A stretch of 63,563 nt of DNA, filler included, from Platydemus manokwari (Eukaryota): assembly GCA_037951405.1 (NCBI GenBank). It is 6 parts of 6 records of this genome, joined end to end, with 100 filler letters (N's around TTAATTAATTAA, not from the genome) between each part and the next. Parts side by side here need not be neighbours in the genome. Positions count along the whole stretch, not along the records: positions 1 to 8,758 come from JBBMOY011354982.1; 5 more parts are not named here. The stretch is one strand, 5' to 3'. The position numbers and the translations under genes were made by a program. Below, in pieces: positions 1 through 52,690 of this stretch (position 1 is its first letter; each line of letters opens with the position of its first letter). Under the pieces are notes generated by a model. That model had not been told where the DNA came from. It worked only from the letters and a program-made list of their open reading frames with translations, and did no database searches.

Positions 1-760
1 ATACAAATATTATTATTTATAATTTAGACAATTACAATAAGGAATAAGATAAAGAATAGAAAGAAAATTTAATATTTAATTTAAAAGGTTAATTATTGTA
101 TAATAAAAATTTTTAAGGTTAGATAATTTGATGAAATTTTGAAGTTCAAGAACTCTTAAAACAATAAACATTTAGTCTGAAGTAAAATAATGGTTTCAAA
201 TTTACAGGAGTGATTGAAAACCCTAGGTGCAAAGTACCGAATCTCAGCATCTATATAAGCTGAGGGGCTTCTATCCCAACTCACTTTCAACATTTGGTAG
301 TATAGATAACTTGATAATCAGAGCTTAGTAGCAACATTTTTTTTAATATTCAGAACTTTGTAGCGATATTTGAGATATTCAGAACTTTGTGATATTTCTT
401 GACCAATAATAGATTTTGGTAAAAAAAATCTTATATAATAATCCTATAATCAATACTCTTTATTAAACCCAACCTATTTAAGGATTCACCTTTGGGGTTT
501 ATATAATAAAATACATATTAACTTTGTAAGGATGATAGACAAGTTTCCACGATCTCAATGAGATAACTGTACCGATTTGTTTATTAAAAAATCGTTTGAG
601 CTAAATTGTCTGAGTTAACTTACATCTATAATTTTGTGTTAATCATATTTAAATAAAGTTTTTGTTTGTGCGTGTTATTGATTTTATATTTAAAATACCA
701 TAAAGAACTCACGCTGTTGAGTTGCCCAAACAACTAAACACCATACATAACCCAACGATT
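1..760 (+). repeat. Dispersed structured repeat, copy A
   Basis: Collinear with ~7790-8470 and ~51960-52690. Conserved stem blocks at 210-276, 481-500, 545-563 and 706-723. Confidence 0.8.
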
Positions 761-1460: not shown

Positions 1461-1900
1461 CACGTACATTAAGAACAATGGTCAACGATGGAGTGCTCTG
1501 ATATCGAACCTCCTTTGTGTTGTTATATATATATATATTAAAACTGTGATGTTCTGCTAAAACAATTGATTTTATATTTTTTTAATTATTTGTTTTTTAA
1601 TGTTTTTATTTTAAAAGAAATATGATTTCAGAAGACCACAAAACTAGCTGTGGGTCGTGATTTAATTAAAACAATAAATAAATTACTCATGGTCATCCAT
1701 TGGAAGAATTGCAAAAATAATAAAACTCTTCTTGAGATAATTTGCAGATTAATAGAATTAATTGTGCATACAATTTAGGAATAATTCTCCCACGGGTATC
1801 GCAAATTGGATAAAATAAAATTGGACTTTCAAAATTGTGTCGATAAATGTTGAGCTTTTTAATATTGTCAATTTATAACATGATTGATCACATACAGTTA

Positions 1901-2065
1901 TTATTCGTCAATATCAACTTTCCAATTTGATTTTGATTGAGGCTTTTTGTGAAGCCATTGTAGGCTTTGATAGACCGATTGGGTTTGGCTTGGAATCCTA
2001 TCTTCTGGTAATCTTAGGACAAAGATTGATAAGATTGTTGTGAAGATTGAGGCGATTATCCAGCA
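1901..2065 (-). CDS. Possible orphan terminal exon (hydrophobic segment plus polar tail)
   Basis: TTACAG acceptor followed by 54 open codons, CWIIASIFTTILSIFVLRLPEDR...VDIDE*. No compatible upstream exon was found. Confidence 0.25.
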   Translation of the reverse strand, partial: CWIIASIFTTILSIFVLRLPEDRIPSQTQSVYQSLQWLHKKPQSKSNWKVDIDE

Positions 2066-2930: not shown

Positions 2931-3863
2931 ATGAATATATTTAGATTATGCGGTGATTTATCCCATCTAGGGGCAATAATTATATTACTTATAAAAATAT
3001 GGAAAACTCGTTCTTGCGCTGGTTTGTGATTCATTAAATCAAAGCAAAATCTATTAATTGAATTACTTCAGGGGTTTCGGGCAAAACGCAAATTCTTTTT
3101 CTTATGGTTTTTACTACCCGTTATTTAGATTTATTCACAAATTTTGTGTCGATATACAATACAGTGATGAAAATAACATATTTAGTGCTGATTTATGTGA
3201 CGGTGTATCTTATTTACAAGAAATTCAGACCATCGTTTAATGCTGAAGATGACACGTTTAGAGTGGAATTCGTTATAATTCCTACTTTAGCTCTGGCAAT
3301 TCTAGAAAATCACAAAGCAGAAATAATGGAAGTATGTTGACATTGTTTTGATACAGTTTTCTTGAACCATTTGATTGACTTTTGAATTTTAGATTCTCTG
3401 GACATTTTCAATTTATCTCGAATCTCTGGCCATTTTGCCACAGTTATTCATGATCACGAAAACAGGATCAGCGGAGTCGATTACTTATCATTATTTATTC
3501 GCGTTGGGTATTTATCGAGCTCTATACATTGTTAATTGGCTCTATCGATACTACACTGAAGGATTTTATGATCTAATCGCTATCGTCGCCGGTTGCGTTC
3601 AAACAGTTTTCTATTTAGATTTCTTCTATCTCTACGCGACCAGAGGTAAGAATCGTATGATGATTCATCATCTCGAACAAATCAAATCTTTCATTATACT
3701 AATTACTATTGTTGTAACAGTTTTTCATTAGCAATGATGTTATTATATTGTTATTTGATAATCAAAGCACAATCGAATAATTATAATATTGATTAATATT
3801 GCACTATTTTATTGATTTCTTATTTCAGTTCTCAAAGGCAAAGAAGTGCTTCTGCCAGTCTGA
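2931..3863 (+). CDS. KDELR: ER lumen protein-retaining (KDEL) receptor, ERD2 family, 212 aa, 4 exons
   Basis: Exons 2931-3021, 3072-3331, 3393-3645 and 3829-3863, all GT-AG, total 639 nt. Protein reads [17 protein letters not shown]...SCAGVSGKTQ...[16 protein letters not shown]...[13 protein letters not shown]...[11 protein letters not shown], matching ERD2 motifs. AATAAA at 4103-4108. Confidence 0.97.
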
Positions 3864-6800
3864 TTGCCAGAGAGGTGCACAAAAAATATTCTCGCGCTTA
3901 TGCATGTTTACCAATCAAAATTAAGCATGCCGCGATCATTTTTATCGTGTATAGTTTGGGATCGGTTTTAAATGATGACTTTGTTTTACTGTGAGTGATT
4001 TCGAGCGGTGTGCAATCATAACCAGATATTATGTGTGGTGTGTGTGCCTATATCGCTTGGTTACTCGATTCTGTGAATTGTAAATTTTCAACGTGTCGGT
4101 TAAATAAAACATTTGTCGTATTTTCTCGGTGAATTTTGTGTTTCTTTATATGATATCAGAAATGTTTTCGTACATGCATACATAATTTGCAATTGATTTA
4201 TCATTTAATATCAAGTTCAGTAAATTATTAGATTGATTGTTTTGTTTTAATTAATGCCTATATGGCTTATAAACATTATGTGGATACCACGTAGAAATAA
4301 TAATGTAATCATATATTGGTAATCATATTATGTAATAATCAAGGAATAATTATAAATGTTAAAAATACATAATTAATTCAAGATTATAACAAACATTGAA
4401 TAATTCAGATTTCCAATATTGCACAAGAGCAACTTGTTGGAATGAGATTTGAGAGTCTCAAATATCACCTGCATTAAGTAGAGCAGTAACATATATTGTT
4501 TACAAAATACCATTAAGTCATATGTTACAAATATTGTCTATATGAACTCAATAAAGACTGCGACTAAAATATATTGAAATGAATTTCTACTTGGAATACA
4601 TTATCGAGTGCAAGTAGATTTAATGAGTTCTAATAATTACCAGCATAAAGAAATATTTATATTTACATTGATCTATTGTTTGAATAATTGATTTTTTATA
4701 TTGGCTTAAATATGAACCTATTTATTTGTAAATTTGTTTTATAAAATTAAATAACATTGTAAATAAATATGTTAACAATTCAATTTATGAAATTGTCTTT
4801 TAGAATTATTTTCACTCAATACATTGATGAATGAATAAAATGTGGTTTTAATTCGCTACCAGCAGACATAGATCATTACAAAGTATTTTCCAATATTAGA
4901 AAACATTGAAGTGATATTTTGGTATTGATTTTTGGTTTTTTAAAGAAGTTTTGAAAATTATTTTTTTTAAAAATATTTACATTGTAAATACGTTTGTAAT
5001 TGTTAAATAAATATTTGAACATATTTATATCAAATAATGATTCCCAAGATTTTCATAAGTTACTTCGATAAAACTTGAAGAGAAATCTACAATGAAATAA
5101 GTTTAACTTAATAATGATGTTAATATTTTCATTTATTCAAATCTATCTGTGGTGTTCTCGCCTAAACGTGAAAATAATTAAGAAAATAAATGGATAAATA
5201 ACAGAAAAATTCAAGAATTTTGAATAACTTTTAAAAAAGTTCAGGCTTTTCTTAATTGAGATTTGTCCCAATGACTCAGCCATTTTAATTGGATTTTGTT
5301 TGAGACAAAACCAGTCCGCAGATACACGGAGAAATTAAACGAAGACAAAAAATGTTTGTCTCTTTCGAATGAGAGGCTTTGTTTCGAGTAAATTAAGACA
5401 AAGCTTCAATGGGGAGAAACTAAATGGCTTTACCAGTGCCATACAAACCCGGGCGAGTCAACTATTGTTATGCTATATAAACAAACTGCTCTGAGTCATA
5501 AATGCACAAATTTGGATCAACAAAAGGAATGTAAACTACATTCACTAAGTACACCACCTGGAACAAATAAGCAAGCATTTTGTACAAACTGACAAACAAT
5601 AAGTGAATCCTGTTTACCAGATAATTGTTAACAAATATTTGAGGAATAATTGTAGCTATAATATAATAATAACTATAAATTAGAACCACGAATCACAGAC
5701 ATTGATCAATACACACACAGAATCATCATCACGAGGATAAACGTGCGTCAGAATTTTCAGACAATCAGCCATCCATGTTATATATTGTGCGATTTGGCAC
5801 AAATATTAGAAATAAATCAAACTAAGTCAATCTGATCAAGCATCCATTCCTATTTTGTATATGATCATGAACTAAATAAATAATATATTATTTCGATCAA
5901 TTTAACAGGATAATCACTGATAATAATAAATAGATATTGTTAAAATCACGCACACATCTCCAGTCTTATCATTTAAAAGGTAGCTGATGCTCCACTGTCA
6001 AGCGATACCAGTGGTAGTTTATACTGGGGTCTTGTTGTAACAAATTAATTTAATTAAAATTAAAATTAATTTTTATTGATTTTTTCGTTCGTTTTTATTG
6101 ATTTTGATAGCTATTATTAATAAAAATGTGTTGAAATTCGGGACAGTAAATAGTCATAATATATGTTAACCAATAATCATTACTACTGATAAATTGTTAA
6201 TTAATCTTATAAGGAACTCTTCCTTATTTCTGATATATATAAGTCAGATATACAGATTAAATATTGAGAATTTGTGGCTATCATAACATTTTTACAAATC
6301 GTGCATTTGTACTAAGAACTACATAGTTTCGATCTGGGTAGTAATAATAATCTTGTATGGAACACCGGTGGTTATTTTTTGTTTATCCAGGTATTTATTT
6401 ATTCGTATAACCCACATTGGAGTCTTGATTCAGTATAATTAAACCATAATATTGAAATTATAAGAAAATAAAAACGAGTCGTCGCTTAGTTAAGGTTTGA
6501 TAAAATATATAACATTCATTAAAATTATTGACAGAATAAAACTGATTGGGATGATGAGTCGTAAGAGAAATAAAATGTTATTCTGAGTTTTGCAAAAAAT
6601 TGCAGTCAATCTGTTTAGTTAATAAAATAATTGATTCTTTCGAATGTTTTGTTTGTCGAATATAACATTCGTTTTTAATCATTAACAAATTTCGGCTTTA
6701 GAATGTAATGTTCACGTAAGTGTTCTGAATTTTTAGGGCACGTTTTACTATTTGCTCTTCTGTTTATATGCTTGGATTTCTTTATTTACTTGATTTCCTA

Positions 6801-7789
6801 TTTTATTTATTCTTTATTACCATTTTTATGTTCAATTATTTATGATTACTATTTTTAGATCTTTTTATTTTATAGATTTATAGATTCTATTTAATCTATT
6901 TTTAGATTTTTTCTATTTTAAATTTAATTAATCATCTTTTTTTCAAAATTTTGAAATTTTTTATATATTATTATTACTTGGGATGTAAACAACAATATGG
7001 AGATGAGAATGCAATAATAACTATTTCGTAAAGAAAAGGTGATGAGTGAGTAATGTGTAATACTCTACATAAAGAATAAAACAAGCAAATATCCCTTCAT
7101 TTATTAAAAACAAATATTAGTTTCTTGGCTAAAATTTTTACAGAACAGATTTGCTCTCTTAGGATAAATCAGAAAATTAGGATATGTATCGAGACTTCAC
7201 TCACTATCTGACGAATGAAGATGACTGAGAGCATAACTTTAACTTTCCTTTCAAGGAAACGAATTACGAAGGATTTGTTATTTTCAGAAACCAGAGCCGA
7301 AGACACAAATGTCAATACTTTAACACGTGTATCATGGTGATATTTTTTTGGAAAGCATTGGCCGGCTAGTGCTCTACTCAGATAGTAAAGAGAGCGAGGA
7401 AGAAAAAGCTCCCATTACCATCAGTTGATATGGTGAATGTAAGAGCAGGGTAGTCGGGGAAAAATACGAACAACACCAATCAACACCATCCCAATAACAC
7501 AAATCAGATGAATTTAAAAAGCCAACTGCGCTTCACTGAAAACCGATAAAATCGACTGAACCGGCAAAACCAAACCCAAAATGGGAAACATGGGGTATGA
7601 GAAACTGCAGTGATCGTATGATAGTCAACAAGAATTCCACGGGTACTGCTTCGTCAGGAATATTCATTTATTCAACAATCCAAAATCTACTTTTTGACAA
7701 TTAATTGTGATCTGATGACTCTGGAATTGATGACAATTTTTATGATTCGATAATAATTTTATTTGAAATTAAATCTGTAAATTAATTAT

Positions 7790-8470
7790 TATCTATGTAA
7801 TAAAATATTTCAATAAAATACATATTATTATTTATAAATCAAATAATTATAATCAGAAAATAAGTAAAGAATAAAAAGGAATTTAATAAATAATTTTAAA
7901 GGTTGACAATTTATAGAAAAATTTATGATGCCGACCAAATTTAAATTTTTATAGGGTTAAGGTACTTTTAAAATAATAAATGACTAAATAATAAAAAATG
8001 TTTAAAATTTACAAGAGTGATGGAATATCCTAGGTACAAAGTACCGAATCTCAGCATCAATATAAGCTGATGGATTTCCATCACAATTCACCAAAAAAAA
8101 TTTCGAAATGAAAAATTCTAGATTGTAGCTTAGCATAAGACAAGGAAAATTTCAGAGGGCAATTGAAATATATTTGCAATAATTATTATAATAAATAATA
8201 ACCCAAATTTTTCTAAAGGATTTCACCTTCGGAATTAATATCATAAAATCTATATAAAATTTTATAGAACCTAATCATTAGTTCTCACGTTCCCGGTGAG
8301 ATCACTTGACGCATTTGTTTTTATAAAATTTTGGTTTGAGTTAATTTTGTTAATCGATTTGTACGATCATAAATTAAAGGGTAATTTAATTGTTTTTTGA
8401 TTTGTGTAATAATATAAAAGTCAAATTGAAGAACTCAAGCTGTTGAGTTGAACATAAATGACAACGAACA
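7790..8470 (+). repeat. Dispersed structured repeat, copy B
   Basis: Three-way junction 8017-8084, C(UUCG)G hairpin ~8219-8235, TCTCAC/GTGAGA hairpin 8283-8301, AACTCA/TGAGTT hairpin 8432-8449. Confidence 0.8.
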
Positions 8471-8684
8471 CGATATACACAGTCAAATATTTTCTATAAA
8501 TTCCTGGAATTTTTTTGAGTATTAAGAAAATTGCAGAGAATATTGAGGTCATTTGGTTATTCCTTATAAGTGGAGGTGACCTATGATATAGGAAAGTGAG
8601 ATGAGACAAACCTGTGGTAGATTTATGGTTTAATTAATTAATGATATATTGTAATGTATAGAAATTACAATTTGAGTAATCTTA

Positions 8685-51959: not shown

Positions 51960-52690
51960 ATGAAATAAAAAAAATATTATTATGTATAAATCAAATAAGG
52001 AATAAGACAAGGAATAAAAAGAAATTTGATATTTAATTTAAAAGGTTAATTATTTTATAATATAATTTTTAAGGTTAGATAATTTAATGAAATTTTTAAG
52101 TTAAAGAACTTTTAAAAACAATAAACATTTAGAGTTTAAAGTAAAATAATGGTTTAAAATTTACAAGAGTAGTGGAAAATCCTAGGTACAAAGTACCGAA
52201 TCTCATTTCCATCACAACTCACTCTCGATAAATTCGATATTGCTGATGGCAAAGGCGACAATTAAAACGATATTTTTGGACGAAATTACTTGATTGAAAG
52301 GAAAAGATAAATCGGTAGAAATAAAACCATATTAATTATTTATATTTGTGTTAAAACAAAAGAACATTTCTTTATCCTAAAAACACTGAAGGATCCACTT
52401 TTGGGGTTCATACAATAAAATCTATACTAATTTTGTAATGTATATAGTTTAATCCTCACGATCTCGGTGATATAACTTTACCAAGTTGTTTATTTAACAT
52501 TATCGTTTGAGTTAAATTGGTTGAGCTAATTTTATTTGTAAATTTTTGTTTATAGTATTTTTTTATAAAGTTTTATAAAGATGGTATTTGCCTTTTATTT
52601 ATTGATCTCTAAATTTACCTAATAAAAGGAACTCACGCTGTTGGGTTGATTAAACAACAAAAAACATCTACCACGACCCAACATAAATTA
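51960..52690 (+). repeat. Dispersed structured repeat, copy C
   Basis: Closely matches copy A over the first ~250 bp. One arm of the junction is deleted (52169-52215). Hairpins at 52390-52410, 52455-52470 and 52630-52647. Confidence 0.8.

What the first reader, a model, noticed from the sequence alone, without database searches (positions are those of the whole stretch)
8017..8449. Dispersed non-coding repeat whose conserved parts are RNA stems (three-way junction plus three hairpins)
Seen: three copies (1-760, ~7790-8470, ~51960-52690) diverge freely in their AT-rich linkers but keep four ordered stem blocks. Block 1 is a three-way junction: outer GTGATGGAA-ATCC/GGAT-TTCCATCAC, arm GGTAC-AAA-GTACC, linker GAATC, arm TCAGC/GCTGA. 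Copy A shows a compensatory change (TCC:GGA to CCC:GGG) and a GGTGC/GTACC wobble. Block 2 carries C(UUCG)G in copy B. Block 4 (AACTCA/TGAGTT) becomes TGGGTT in copy C. These wobbles are G-U on the + strand, which points to a + strand transcript. No ORF is conserved. Inference: a structured cis-element of a retroelement (packaging, dimerisation, translation or 3' UTR signal), or an undescribed mobile structured RNA or ribozyme. I do not recognise it as a known RNA family.
Basis: partly seen in the sequence, partly recalled or inferred. Interest (0 to 1): 0.8.

Follow-up and report, generated by a model that had tools for sequence, protein, structure and literature searches.

The report
Solo LTR of an old retrotransposon
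The repeat is most likely a 1.1 kb long terminal repeat (LTR) left behind by an old gypsy-type retrotransposon, present in roughly a thousand decayed copies; its conserved blocks look like the LTR's promoter core, two RNA hairpins and its end signals, so it is ordinary transposon biology and not a new kind of RNA.

Summary
The repeat is real and abundant. A 26-base piece of Block 1 occurs 485 times in this 911 Mb genome with at most 2 mismatches, and 0 times in the control.

Copy B runs from 7345 to 8489 (1145 bp). Family ends are sharp: 5'-TGTTGGG...CCCAACA-3', a 7-bp inverted terminal repeat of the TG...CA type. Flanks carry 4-bp target-site duplications, perfect in 4 of 12 scored copies against 0.12 expected. 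This is the mark of a retroviral-type integrase, so the unit is most likely a solo LTR.

A reading frame is open from the very first base. It has no start codon and ends at a shared stop about 97 codons in. That fits an internal gene running into the 3' LTR. No internal region was found next to any sampled copy.

Copies A and B belong to different subfamilies, which explains "conserved blocks, free linkers".
- **Block 1:** identical across subfamilies, no covariation, folds equally well on both strands, and holds a TATA box with an initiator-like motif 31 nt downstream.
- **Blocks 2 and 3:** three lineage-level compensatory changes and a conserved U-G wobble, so they are probably plus-strand RNA hairpins.
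- **Known RNA families:** no Rfam or tRNA match.

Interest is low.

The parts
7345..8489 (+). Copy B: a full-length unit (1145 bp) of the dispersed repeat, read as a solo LTR
   Evidence: Homology of more than 25 genomic copies starts at 7340-7347 and ends at 8457-8499 in BLAST. Ends were set against the family termini.
1..757 (+). Copy A: the 3' two thirds of a unit from a different subfamily, cut by the contig start
   Evidence: Alignment to copy B. In Blocks 2-3, the linkers and the AATAAA region it resembles L064, L090 and L091. Model R2 scores it 64.7 bits, against 135 bits for copy B.
7345..7351 (+). 5' terminus. The family form is TGTTGGG; this copy reads TTTTTGG
   Evidence: Junction listings of full copies. 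The family form matches the TGTNR pattern of gypsy LTR ends described in PMC2836005.
8483..8489 (+). 3' terminus. The family form is CCCAACA, the exact inverse complement of the 5' end; this copy reads TCAAATA
7341..7344 (.). Left flank of copy B (TATT), the remnant of a 4-bp target-site duplication with 8490-8493
   Evidence: 3 of 4 bases match TTTT at 8490-8493. In the family, 4 of 12 copies match perfectly and 7 of 12 at 3 of 4 or better; control offsets give 0.12 perfect matches.
8490..8493 (.). Right flank of copy B (TTTT), partner of 7341-7344
7345..7704 (+). GC-richer 'head' holding the remnant of a reading frame that is open from base 1 of the unit. In copy B it is broken by a stop at 7426-7428 and by later frameshifts
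   Evidence: Across 33 copies, frame 1 has a median open length of 27 codons, against 7 and 4 for the other frames. Copies share a peptide and at least 10 share a stop after ...VDLDV. GC is 0.35-0.38 here, against about 0.25 in the surroundings. The + ORF 7597-7704 has the same C-terminal end as ORFs in L056 and L014.
8017..8085 (+). Block 1: inverted-repeat three-way junction, the part most conserved between subfamilies
   Evidence: Fold energy -26.8 kcal/mol with z = -5.1 on plus and z = -4.7 on minus. Between-subfamily identity 0.83-0.89. No covariation. Model R1 scores this copy 111 bits.
8059..8066 (+). TATA-box-like octamer in the loop of the second hairpin of Block 1. The family form is TATATAAG; copy B reads AATATAAG
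   Evidence: These columns are invariant or at least 90% conserved in 34 copies and are the same in all subfamilies.
8087..8094 (+). Initiator-like motif. The family form is TTCACTCT, with its A at 8090, 31 nt after the first T of the TATA box. Between-subfamily conservation drops just after it
   Evidence: Read directly from the sequence and from the profile. That this is the transcription start is an inference.
8211..8234 (+). Block 2: 9-bp hairpin with a conserved U-G wobble
   Evidence: Pair 1 is U-A in 33 copies and C-G in 4. Pair 5 is G-C 22, G-U 6, A-U 6. Pair 4 is U-G in 31 of 40 copies and in all subfamilies.
8279..8307 (+). Block 3: hairpin of 6 + 4 bp with a 2-nt bulge
   Evidence: The second outer pair is A-U in 31 copies and G-C in 4, namely L064, L090, L091 and L088 (counts on the CM-fitted alignment).
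8372..8377 (+). Polyadenylation-signal-like hexamer. The family form is AATAAA, followed by a T/GT-rich stretch; copy B reads AATTAA
   Evidence: Seen at the same aligned place in the main family and in the divergent subfamilies. This is weak evidence in a genome this AT-rich.
8432..8449 (+). Block 4: 6-bp hairpin AACTCA/TGAGTT, about 40 nt before the 3' end
   Evidence: Stem and loop are sequence-conserved in every subfamily, with no covariation. The fold alone is not significant, z = -1.1.

Best explanation
The repeat unit (copy B, 7345-8489) is a solo long terminal repeat of an old gypsy-like LTR retrotransposon family, present in roughly a thousand decayed copies.

Shown:
- sharp ends of the form TGTTGGG...CCCAACA;
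- 4-bp target-site duplications, so insertion was by a retroviral-type integrase;
- several subfamilies;
- a reading frame that is open from base 1 without a start codon.

Inferred anatomy, plus strand:
- **U3** is about 7345-8089. Its first roughly 290 nt are the tail of an internal gene that overlapped the 3' LTR.
- **Block 1** is the core promoter region. It has a TATA box in a hairpin loop, bracketed by 13-nt palindromic arms, with an initiator-like motif 31 nt downstream at about 8090.
- **R** starts near 8090 and holds Blocks 2 and 3. These act as RNA hairpins in the leader and the 3' end of the element's genomic RNA.
- **An AATAAA-like signal** sits near 8372.
- **U5** is about the last 100 nt. 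It holds the Block 4 hairpin and the integrase end.

Individual copies have decayed neutrally. Conservation is seen only between subfamily founders.
For: - **Ends and duplications:**. Perfect 4-bp duplications occur in 4 of 12 scored copies, plus L017 by eye; 7 of 12 match at 3 of 4 or better; 143 control offsets average 0.12. There is no match in a 5-bp register.
- **Published definition:** PMC12440569 states that most LTR retrotransposons make 4-6 bp duplications and have TG...CA termini. PMC2836005 states that TGTNR is the pattern of most gypsy LTR ends.
- **Frame entering from outside the unit:** frame 1 has a median of 27 open codons against 7 and 4, a shared peptide, a shared stop and no ATG. 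It has no Pfam family and no true relative among 1.84 billion proteins.
- **Copy number:**
- **Neutral decay inside the family:**
- **Subfamilies and the conservation peak at 8005-8094, ending at the putative start site:**
- **TATA columns at least 90% conserved:**
- **Blocks 2 and 3:** three pairs with changes on both sides, and a conserved U-G wobble. There are 17 double-change cells against 9.7 +/- 2.5 in shuffles, reached by 3 of 500.
- **AATAAA at the same aligned place in all subfamilies:**
Against: - No internal region (primer-binding site, polypurine tract, gag-pol) was found. None of 33 5' junctions or the sampled 3' junctions shares flanking sequence with another copy. The stretch between copies A and B is a host KDEL-receptor gene plus unrelated short repeats. 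With this sample, only a fraction of full-length elements above roughly a fifth can be excluded.
- The U3/R/U5 borders, the promoter and the poly(A) site are read from sequence alone. No RNA run exists for this organism here.
- In a 26% GC genome, TATA-like and AATAAA-like strings are common.
- The covariation signal rests on few lineages and on an alignment fitted to the structure. The tool warns that related sequences can beat the shuffles without any structure.
- One contig holds two copies of the Block 1 26-mer 1136 bp apart in tandem, which is unexplained.
Confidence: 0.65

Rival explanations
1. The 1.15 kb unit is a complete non-autonomous element, not an LTR. It would be moved as DNA by a gypsy-integrase-like DDE transposase (Ginger-like or similar), and the conserved blocks would be subterminal or internal binding sites.
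For: TGTNR termini and 4-bp duplications are shared by Ginger transposons (PMC2836005). No internal retrotransposon sequence was found next to any sampled copy. Deletion derivatives that keep both ends exist, such as L054, L036, L044 and L084.
Against: Ginger elements have terminal inverted repeats of 40-270 bp (PMC2836005). Here only 7 bp are inverted, and the next bases do not match. Ginger1 targets CCGG or CCGT, whereas here the duplications are AAAT, ATGG, TAAT, AATA and CTAT. A frame that is open from the first base without a start codon has no explanation in a self-contained DNA element.
Confidence: 0.12
2. Block 1 works as an RNA three-way junction, for example a packaging, dimerisation, export or self-cleaving element in the U3-derived 3' part of the element's RNA, and not as a DNA promoter element.
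For: The fold is very stable (z = -5.1). It is the part most conserved between subfamilies. At least 150 copies score 95-118 bits with a structure-aware model, apart from one end-truncated hit at 80 bits. Neighbouring Blocks 2 and 3 do behave like RNA hairpins.
Against: There is no covariation at any of 23 pairs: 87.1% paired against 87.0% in shuffles. Loops and linkers are as conserved as stems. The minus strand folds equally well. One-sided changes favour A-C over G-U, 44 to 25. No Rfam family matches 11 copies. The junction strands (UA, GAAUC, U) do not fit a hammerhead core. A TATA box with an initiator-like motif at the canonical distance explains the sequence-level conservation.
Confidence: 0.12
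3. It is a LINE-dependent SINE-like retroposon, and its conserved 3' hairpin (Block 4) and tail are recognised by a partner LINE reverse transcriptase.
For: The 3' hairpin and about 60 nt of tail are conserved across otherwise divergent subfamilies. Some copies begin at various internal points.
Against: The 5' end is sharp in more than 25 copies and is not a gradient of truncations. Duplications are a fixed 4 bp. There is no A-rich or simple-repeat tail, no tRNA-like or other RNA-gene head, and the termini are TG...CA inverted. The LINE reverse-transcriptase fragment found in L060 lies in the opposite orientation and is only a neighbour.
Confidence: 0.04

Closest known systems
Solo LTRs of Ty3/gypsy-type (Metaviridae) LTR retrotransposons
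   Same: Termini are 5'-TG...CA-3' in the TGTNR form. The terminal inverted repeat is short (7 bp). The target-site duplication is 4 bp. The length is about 1.1-1.3 kb. The ordered layout reads as a promoter with TATA, then a transcribed part with hairpins, an AATAAA and a short last segment. There are many isolated copies and several subfamilies.
   Different: No paired copies around a gag-pol interior were found in this sample, so the superfamily (gypsy or BEL/Pao) is not established. The first roughly 97 codons are the tail of an unknown gene with no relatives. The TATA box lies in the loop of a small hairpin inside a 13-bp-armed palindrome.
Ginger1 / Ginger2 cut-and-paste DNA transposons (PMC2836005)
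   Same: TGTNR termini and 4-bp target-site duplications. Ginger2 prefers AT-rich targets.
   Different: Ginger inverted repeats are 40-270 bp, against 7 bp here. Ginger1 duplicates CCGG or CCGT. No transposase was found, and the frame open from base 1 does not fit.
R-U5 leader hairpins of retroviruses and LTR retrotransposons (TAR, poly(A) hairpin, U5 stem-loops; from general knowledge, not tested here)
   Same: There are small hairpins downstream of the inferred start site and one about 40 nt from the LTR end. Two of them show compensatory changes between lineages.
   Different: There is no sequence or Rfam relationship to any described element. Their role here is inferred only from position.
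Hammerhead ribozymes of Penelope-like elements and retrozymes
   Same: A three-way junction in the repeated terminal part of a retroelement that begins inside a reading frame.
   Different: The conserved hammerhead core is absent, with no Rfam hit in 11 copies. The ends are sharp, with TG...CA and 4-bp duplications, instead of the variable truncations of Penelope-like elements.

Membership tests
LTR of an LTR retrotransposon (gypsy-like) | 5'-TG...CA-3' termini with a short terminal inverted repeat (TGTNR pattern) | tested here: met
   TGTTGGG...CCCAACA in full copies. The pattern is as described in PMC2836005 and PMC12440569.
LTR of an LTR retrotransposon (gypsy-like) | Target-site duplication of 4-6 bp | tested here: met
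   Exactly 4 bp. Perfect in 4 of 12 copies (plus L017) and at least 3 of 4 in 7 of 12. Control offsets average 0.12 perfect. No match in 5-nt or 6-nt registers.
LTR of an LTR retrotransposon (gypsy-like) | Two direct copies flanking an interior with a primer-binding site, gag-pol and a polypurine tract | tested here: inconclusive
   None was found among 33 5' junctions and the sampled 3' junctions. Copies A and B, 7.8 kb apart, belong to different subfamilies and flank a host gene. Indirect support comes from the frame that enters at base 1.
LTR of an LTR retrotransposon (gypsy-like) | U3-R-U5 organisation: promoter, transcription start and poly(A) signal inside the unit | tested here: inconclusive
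   A TATA box, an initiator-like motif 31 nt downstream and an AATAAA are conserved across subfamilies. No RNA data are available to map transcript ends.
Ginger DNA transposons | Terminal inverted repeats of about 40-270 bp | tested here: not met
   Only 7 bp are inverted.
Ginger DNA transposons | 4-bp duplication, CCGG or CCGT for Ginger1 | tested here: not met
   The length matches, but the sequences are AAAT, ATGG, TAAT, AATA and CTAT.
SINE / LINE-dependent retroposon | RNA-gene-derived head, A-rich or simple-repeat tail, duplications of variable length | tested here: not met
   There is no tRNA or other Rfam match. The unit ends in CCCAACA, and the duplication is a fixed 4 bp.
Known structured RNA families (hammerhead, twister, HDV-like and others) | A match to the family covariance model | tested here: not met
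   0 matches at E up to 1 in the whole window and in ten other copies.
Helitron | 5'-TC...CTRR-3' ends, a hairpin 10-12 nt before the 3' end, no duplication, insertion between A and T | tested here: not met
   The ends are TGTTGGG and CCCAACA, the hairpin lies about 40 nt from the end, and 4-bp duplications are present.

The most novel reading that the evidence does not exclude
Block 1 is a functional RNA three-way junction of a kind not yet described, for instance a self-cleaving or 3'-end-forming element or a packaging signal. Purifying selection so strong that no covariation could arise would have kept it nearly invariant across all subfamilies of this LTR family. Alternatively, the family is a new type of integrase-mobilised unit that never had an interior.
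Probability: 0.07. Interest if true: 0.6.

Novelty: new member of a known kind. Interest (0 to 1): 0.2.

Why it matters
Mainly for annotation. A repeat of about a thousand copies in a poorly assembled, AT-rich animal-like genome can be masked and named as an LTR family, and its conserved palindrome should not be taken for a new RNA gene.

There is minor biological interest. The LTR seems to carry the tail of an orphan gene of the lost element. Its most conserved part is a TATA box held in a small hairpin inside a 13-bp-armed palindrome. Two downstream hairpins show real compensatory evolution between subfamilies, so they could serve as a small test case for leader RNA structure in invertebrate LTR elements.

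Tried and rejected
- **Known RNA families:** Rfam at permissive thresholds on the window and ten other copies gave nothing. ARAGORN gave nothing. By eye, Block 1 fits no hammerhead permutation.
- **Copies A and B as the two LTRs of one element:** rejected. They belong to different subfamilies, and the interval is a KDEL-receptor gene (PF00810) plus unrelated short repeats.
- **Search for an interior:**
  - Masked all-against-all comparison of flanks gave no shared flank next to any end.
  - A pattern of the 3' end followed by TGG gave 76 places against 39 in the control, with no shared downstream sequence.
  - Frames upstream of the unit are short and unrelated, with no polypurine tract.
- **The 'head only' copies as a separate short element:** rejected. 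They are truncations and internal deletions with heterogeneous ends.
- **Homologues of the head peptide:** no Pfam family. The profile search of 1.84 billion proteins gave a single hit, a bacterial SprB-repeat protein matched in low-complexity stretches, with hhalign probability 9%. It is spurious.
- **Expression:** the only run holding the stretch is kept as contigs and is not on record as RNA.
- **More copies:** I did not try to read flanks by other means.
- **Consensus:** Only short motifs and natural copies are reported.

Full report
**What is there.**

The piece is an AT-rich (about 26% GC) eukaryotic contig. It comes from a 911 Mb assembly of about 2 million contigs. Two homologous stretches lie on the plus strand, at 1-757 (copy A, cut by the contig start) and at 7345-8489 (copy B).

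The family is highly repeated in the same genome:
- 918 first-look candidates, with the 40 scored copies at 71-84% identity;
- at least 150 hits of 95-118 bits, plus one end-truncated hit at 80 bits, to a covariance model of Block 1;
- 485 places for a 26-base piece of Block 1 with at most 2 mismatches, against 0 for the reversed control.

At about 12% decay per copy, the last figure implies on the order of a thousand units. That estimate is my inference.

**True extent and ends.**

In more than 25 copies it starts sharply at window 7340-7347 and ends at 8457-8499.

Junction listings give the family termini 5'-TGTTGGG...CCCAACA-3'. This is a 7-bp inverted terminal repeat of the TG...CA type, and the bases beyond it are not inverted.

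The four bases on either side are duplicated:
- 4 of 12 machine-scored copies match perfectly, and L017 matches by eye;
- 7 of 12 match at 3 of 4 or better;
- 143 control offsets average 0.12 perfect matches;
- 5-nt and 6-nt registers give none.

Copy B itself has TATT and TTTT as flanks.

Most LTR retrotransposons have TG...CA ends and make 4-6 bp duplications (PMC12440569). TGTNR is the pattern of most gypsy LTR ends (PMC2836005). Ginger DNA transposons share TGTNR and 4-bp duplications, but they need inverted repeats of 40-270 bp, and Ginger1 needs CCGG or CCGT targets (PMC2836005). Neither condition is met here.

There is no A-rich tail, no tRNA-like head, and no Helitron ends.

**A frame that enters from outside.**

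The first roughly 350 nt are GC-richer, 0.35-0.38. Starting at the very first base of the unit, frame 1 is preferentially open. Its median is 27 codons, against 7 and 4 for the other frames, over 33 copies.

The copies share a Ser/Glu-rich then Pro/Lys-rich peptide. At least ten copies stop at the same place, after ...VDLDV, about 97 codons in. There is no start codon. A divergent subfamily copy (L029) keeps parts of the peptide.

The peptide has no Pfam family. A profile search of 1.84 billion proteins gave only a spurious low-complexity hit to a bacterial SprB-repeat protein.

A frame with no start that is open at the boundary makes sense if an internal gene of a complete element ran into its 3' LTR. 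This is the main indirect argument that the unit is an LTR and not a self-contained element.

**No interior found.**

None of the 33 5' junctions or the sampled 3' junctions shares flanking sequence with another copy. A search for the 3' end followed by TGG gave nothing coherent.

The 6.6 kb between copies A and B holds a KDEL-receptor gene (PF00810) and unrelated short repeats. Copies A and B also belong to different subfamilies. All sampled units are therefore solo.

My sample excludes only a high share of complete elements.

**The conserved blocks.**

Inside the main family every part decays alike, at 0.55-0.8 per column, as expected for neutral copies.

Pairwise identity between 12 main-family copies and 6 divergent copies is 0.78-0.89 at 8005-8094. 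That equals the within-family identity. It then drops abruptly, and elsewhere it is 0.1-0.6, with smaller peaks over Blocks 2-4.

*Block 1 (8017-8085).* It folds as described, at -26.8 kcal/mol with z = -5.1. The minus strand folds equally well, z = -4.7.
- In 34 copies, 87.1% of cells pair, against 87.0% in shuffles. This means no covariation.
- Loops and linkers are as conserved as stems.
- The loop of the second hairpin is a TATA box (family TATATAAG, 8059-8066).
- An initiator-like TTCACTCT places its A at 8090, 31 nt after the first T of the TATA box, just where conservation ends.

I therefore read Block 1 as the core promoter region at the end of U3, possibly with palindromic factor sites. 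This is an inference from sequence.

*Block 2 (8211-8234).* This is a 9-bp hairpin.
- The U-G wobble at pair 4 is kept in 31 of 40 copies and in all subfamilies.
- Pair 1 is U-A in the main family and C-G in the four divergent copies.
- Pair 5 runs G-C (22), G-U (6), A-U (6).
- Apart from the ancestral wobble there are 33 G-U against 12 A-C.

*Block 3 (8279-8307).* One outer pair is A-U in 31 copies and G-C in 4 copies of the divergent subfamilies.

*Blocks 2 and 3 together.* On an alignment fitted to a covariance model (45 copies), 17 cells have changes on both sides, against 9.7 +/- 2.5 in shuffles (3 of 500 shuffles reach it) and against 5-11 for slid partners. This is modest support, resting on few lineages, for plus-strand RNA hairpins.

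*AATAAA.* The hexamer sits at the same aligned place in all subfamilies, at 8372-8377 in copy B.

*Block 4 (8432-8449).* It is conserved in sequence, loop included, about 40 nt before the end, with no covariation.

**Known RNA families.** No Rfam family matches the window or ten other copies at E up to 1.

**Verdict.**

- The unit is most likely a solo LTR of an old gypsy-like retrotransposon (confidence about 0.65).
- Block 1 is better explained as a promoter core than as an RNA junction.
- Blocks 2 and 3 are plausible leader or 3'-end RNA hairpins.

This is ordinary transposon biology in a little-known genome. I could not check Dfam or Repbase, so the family may already be named.

I report only natural copies and short motifs.

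Noticed in passing
window 3104-3340 and 3435-3731 (+): Two exons of a KDEL (ER lumen protein retaining) receptor gene, separated by an intron of about 95 nt. They match PF00810 at E 8e-19 and 5e-14. The gene lies between the two repeat copies.
   Followed up: partly
window about 940-1370, 1620-1870, 1880-2035, 6095-6415 and 6510-6980: Other, unrelated dispersed repeats of 150-450 bp, each with many copies at 70-83% identity elsewhere in the genome. They were not classified.
   Followed up: no
L035:894-1508 (+): An open frame with a PIF1-like helicase domain (PF05970, E 5e-17), as in Helitron Rep/Hel proteins. It is interrupted right where a truncated copy of the repeat begins, so the repeat seems to have inserted into it.
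   Followed up: partly
L060:137-787 (+): A reverse-transcriptase fragment (PF00078, E 5e-11) that looks non-LTR (LINE)-like from its sequence motifs. It lies next to, and opposite in orientation to, the 3' end of a divergent copy of the repeat.
   Followed up: partly
G000:C398666:746-771 and 1882-1907 (-): Two perfect copies of the Block 1 26-mer lie 1136 bp apart in the same orientation, which is about one unit length. This suggests a head-to-tail tandem of two units. It could not be fetched.
   Followed up: no
L054, L036, L044, L084: Internally deleted derivatives of the unit keep the 5' head and the 3' end. In L084, Block 1 is joined almost directly to the terminal CCCAACA. It is unknown whether these amplified or are one-off deletions.
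   Followed up: no
window 8245-8259 (+): A second TATA-like, AATAAA-like string (ATCTATATAAA; ATCTATAATAAA in many copies) lies between Blocks 2 and 3. It is conserved between subfamilies at 0.69. It could be an alternative promoter or poly(A) signal.
   Followed up: no
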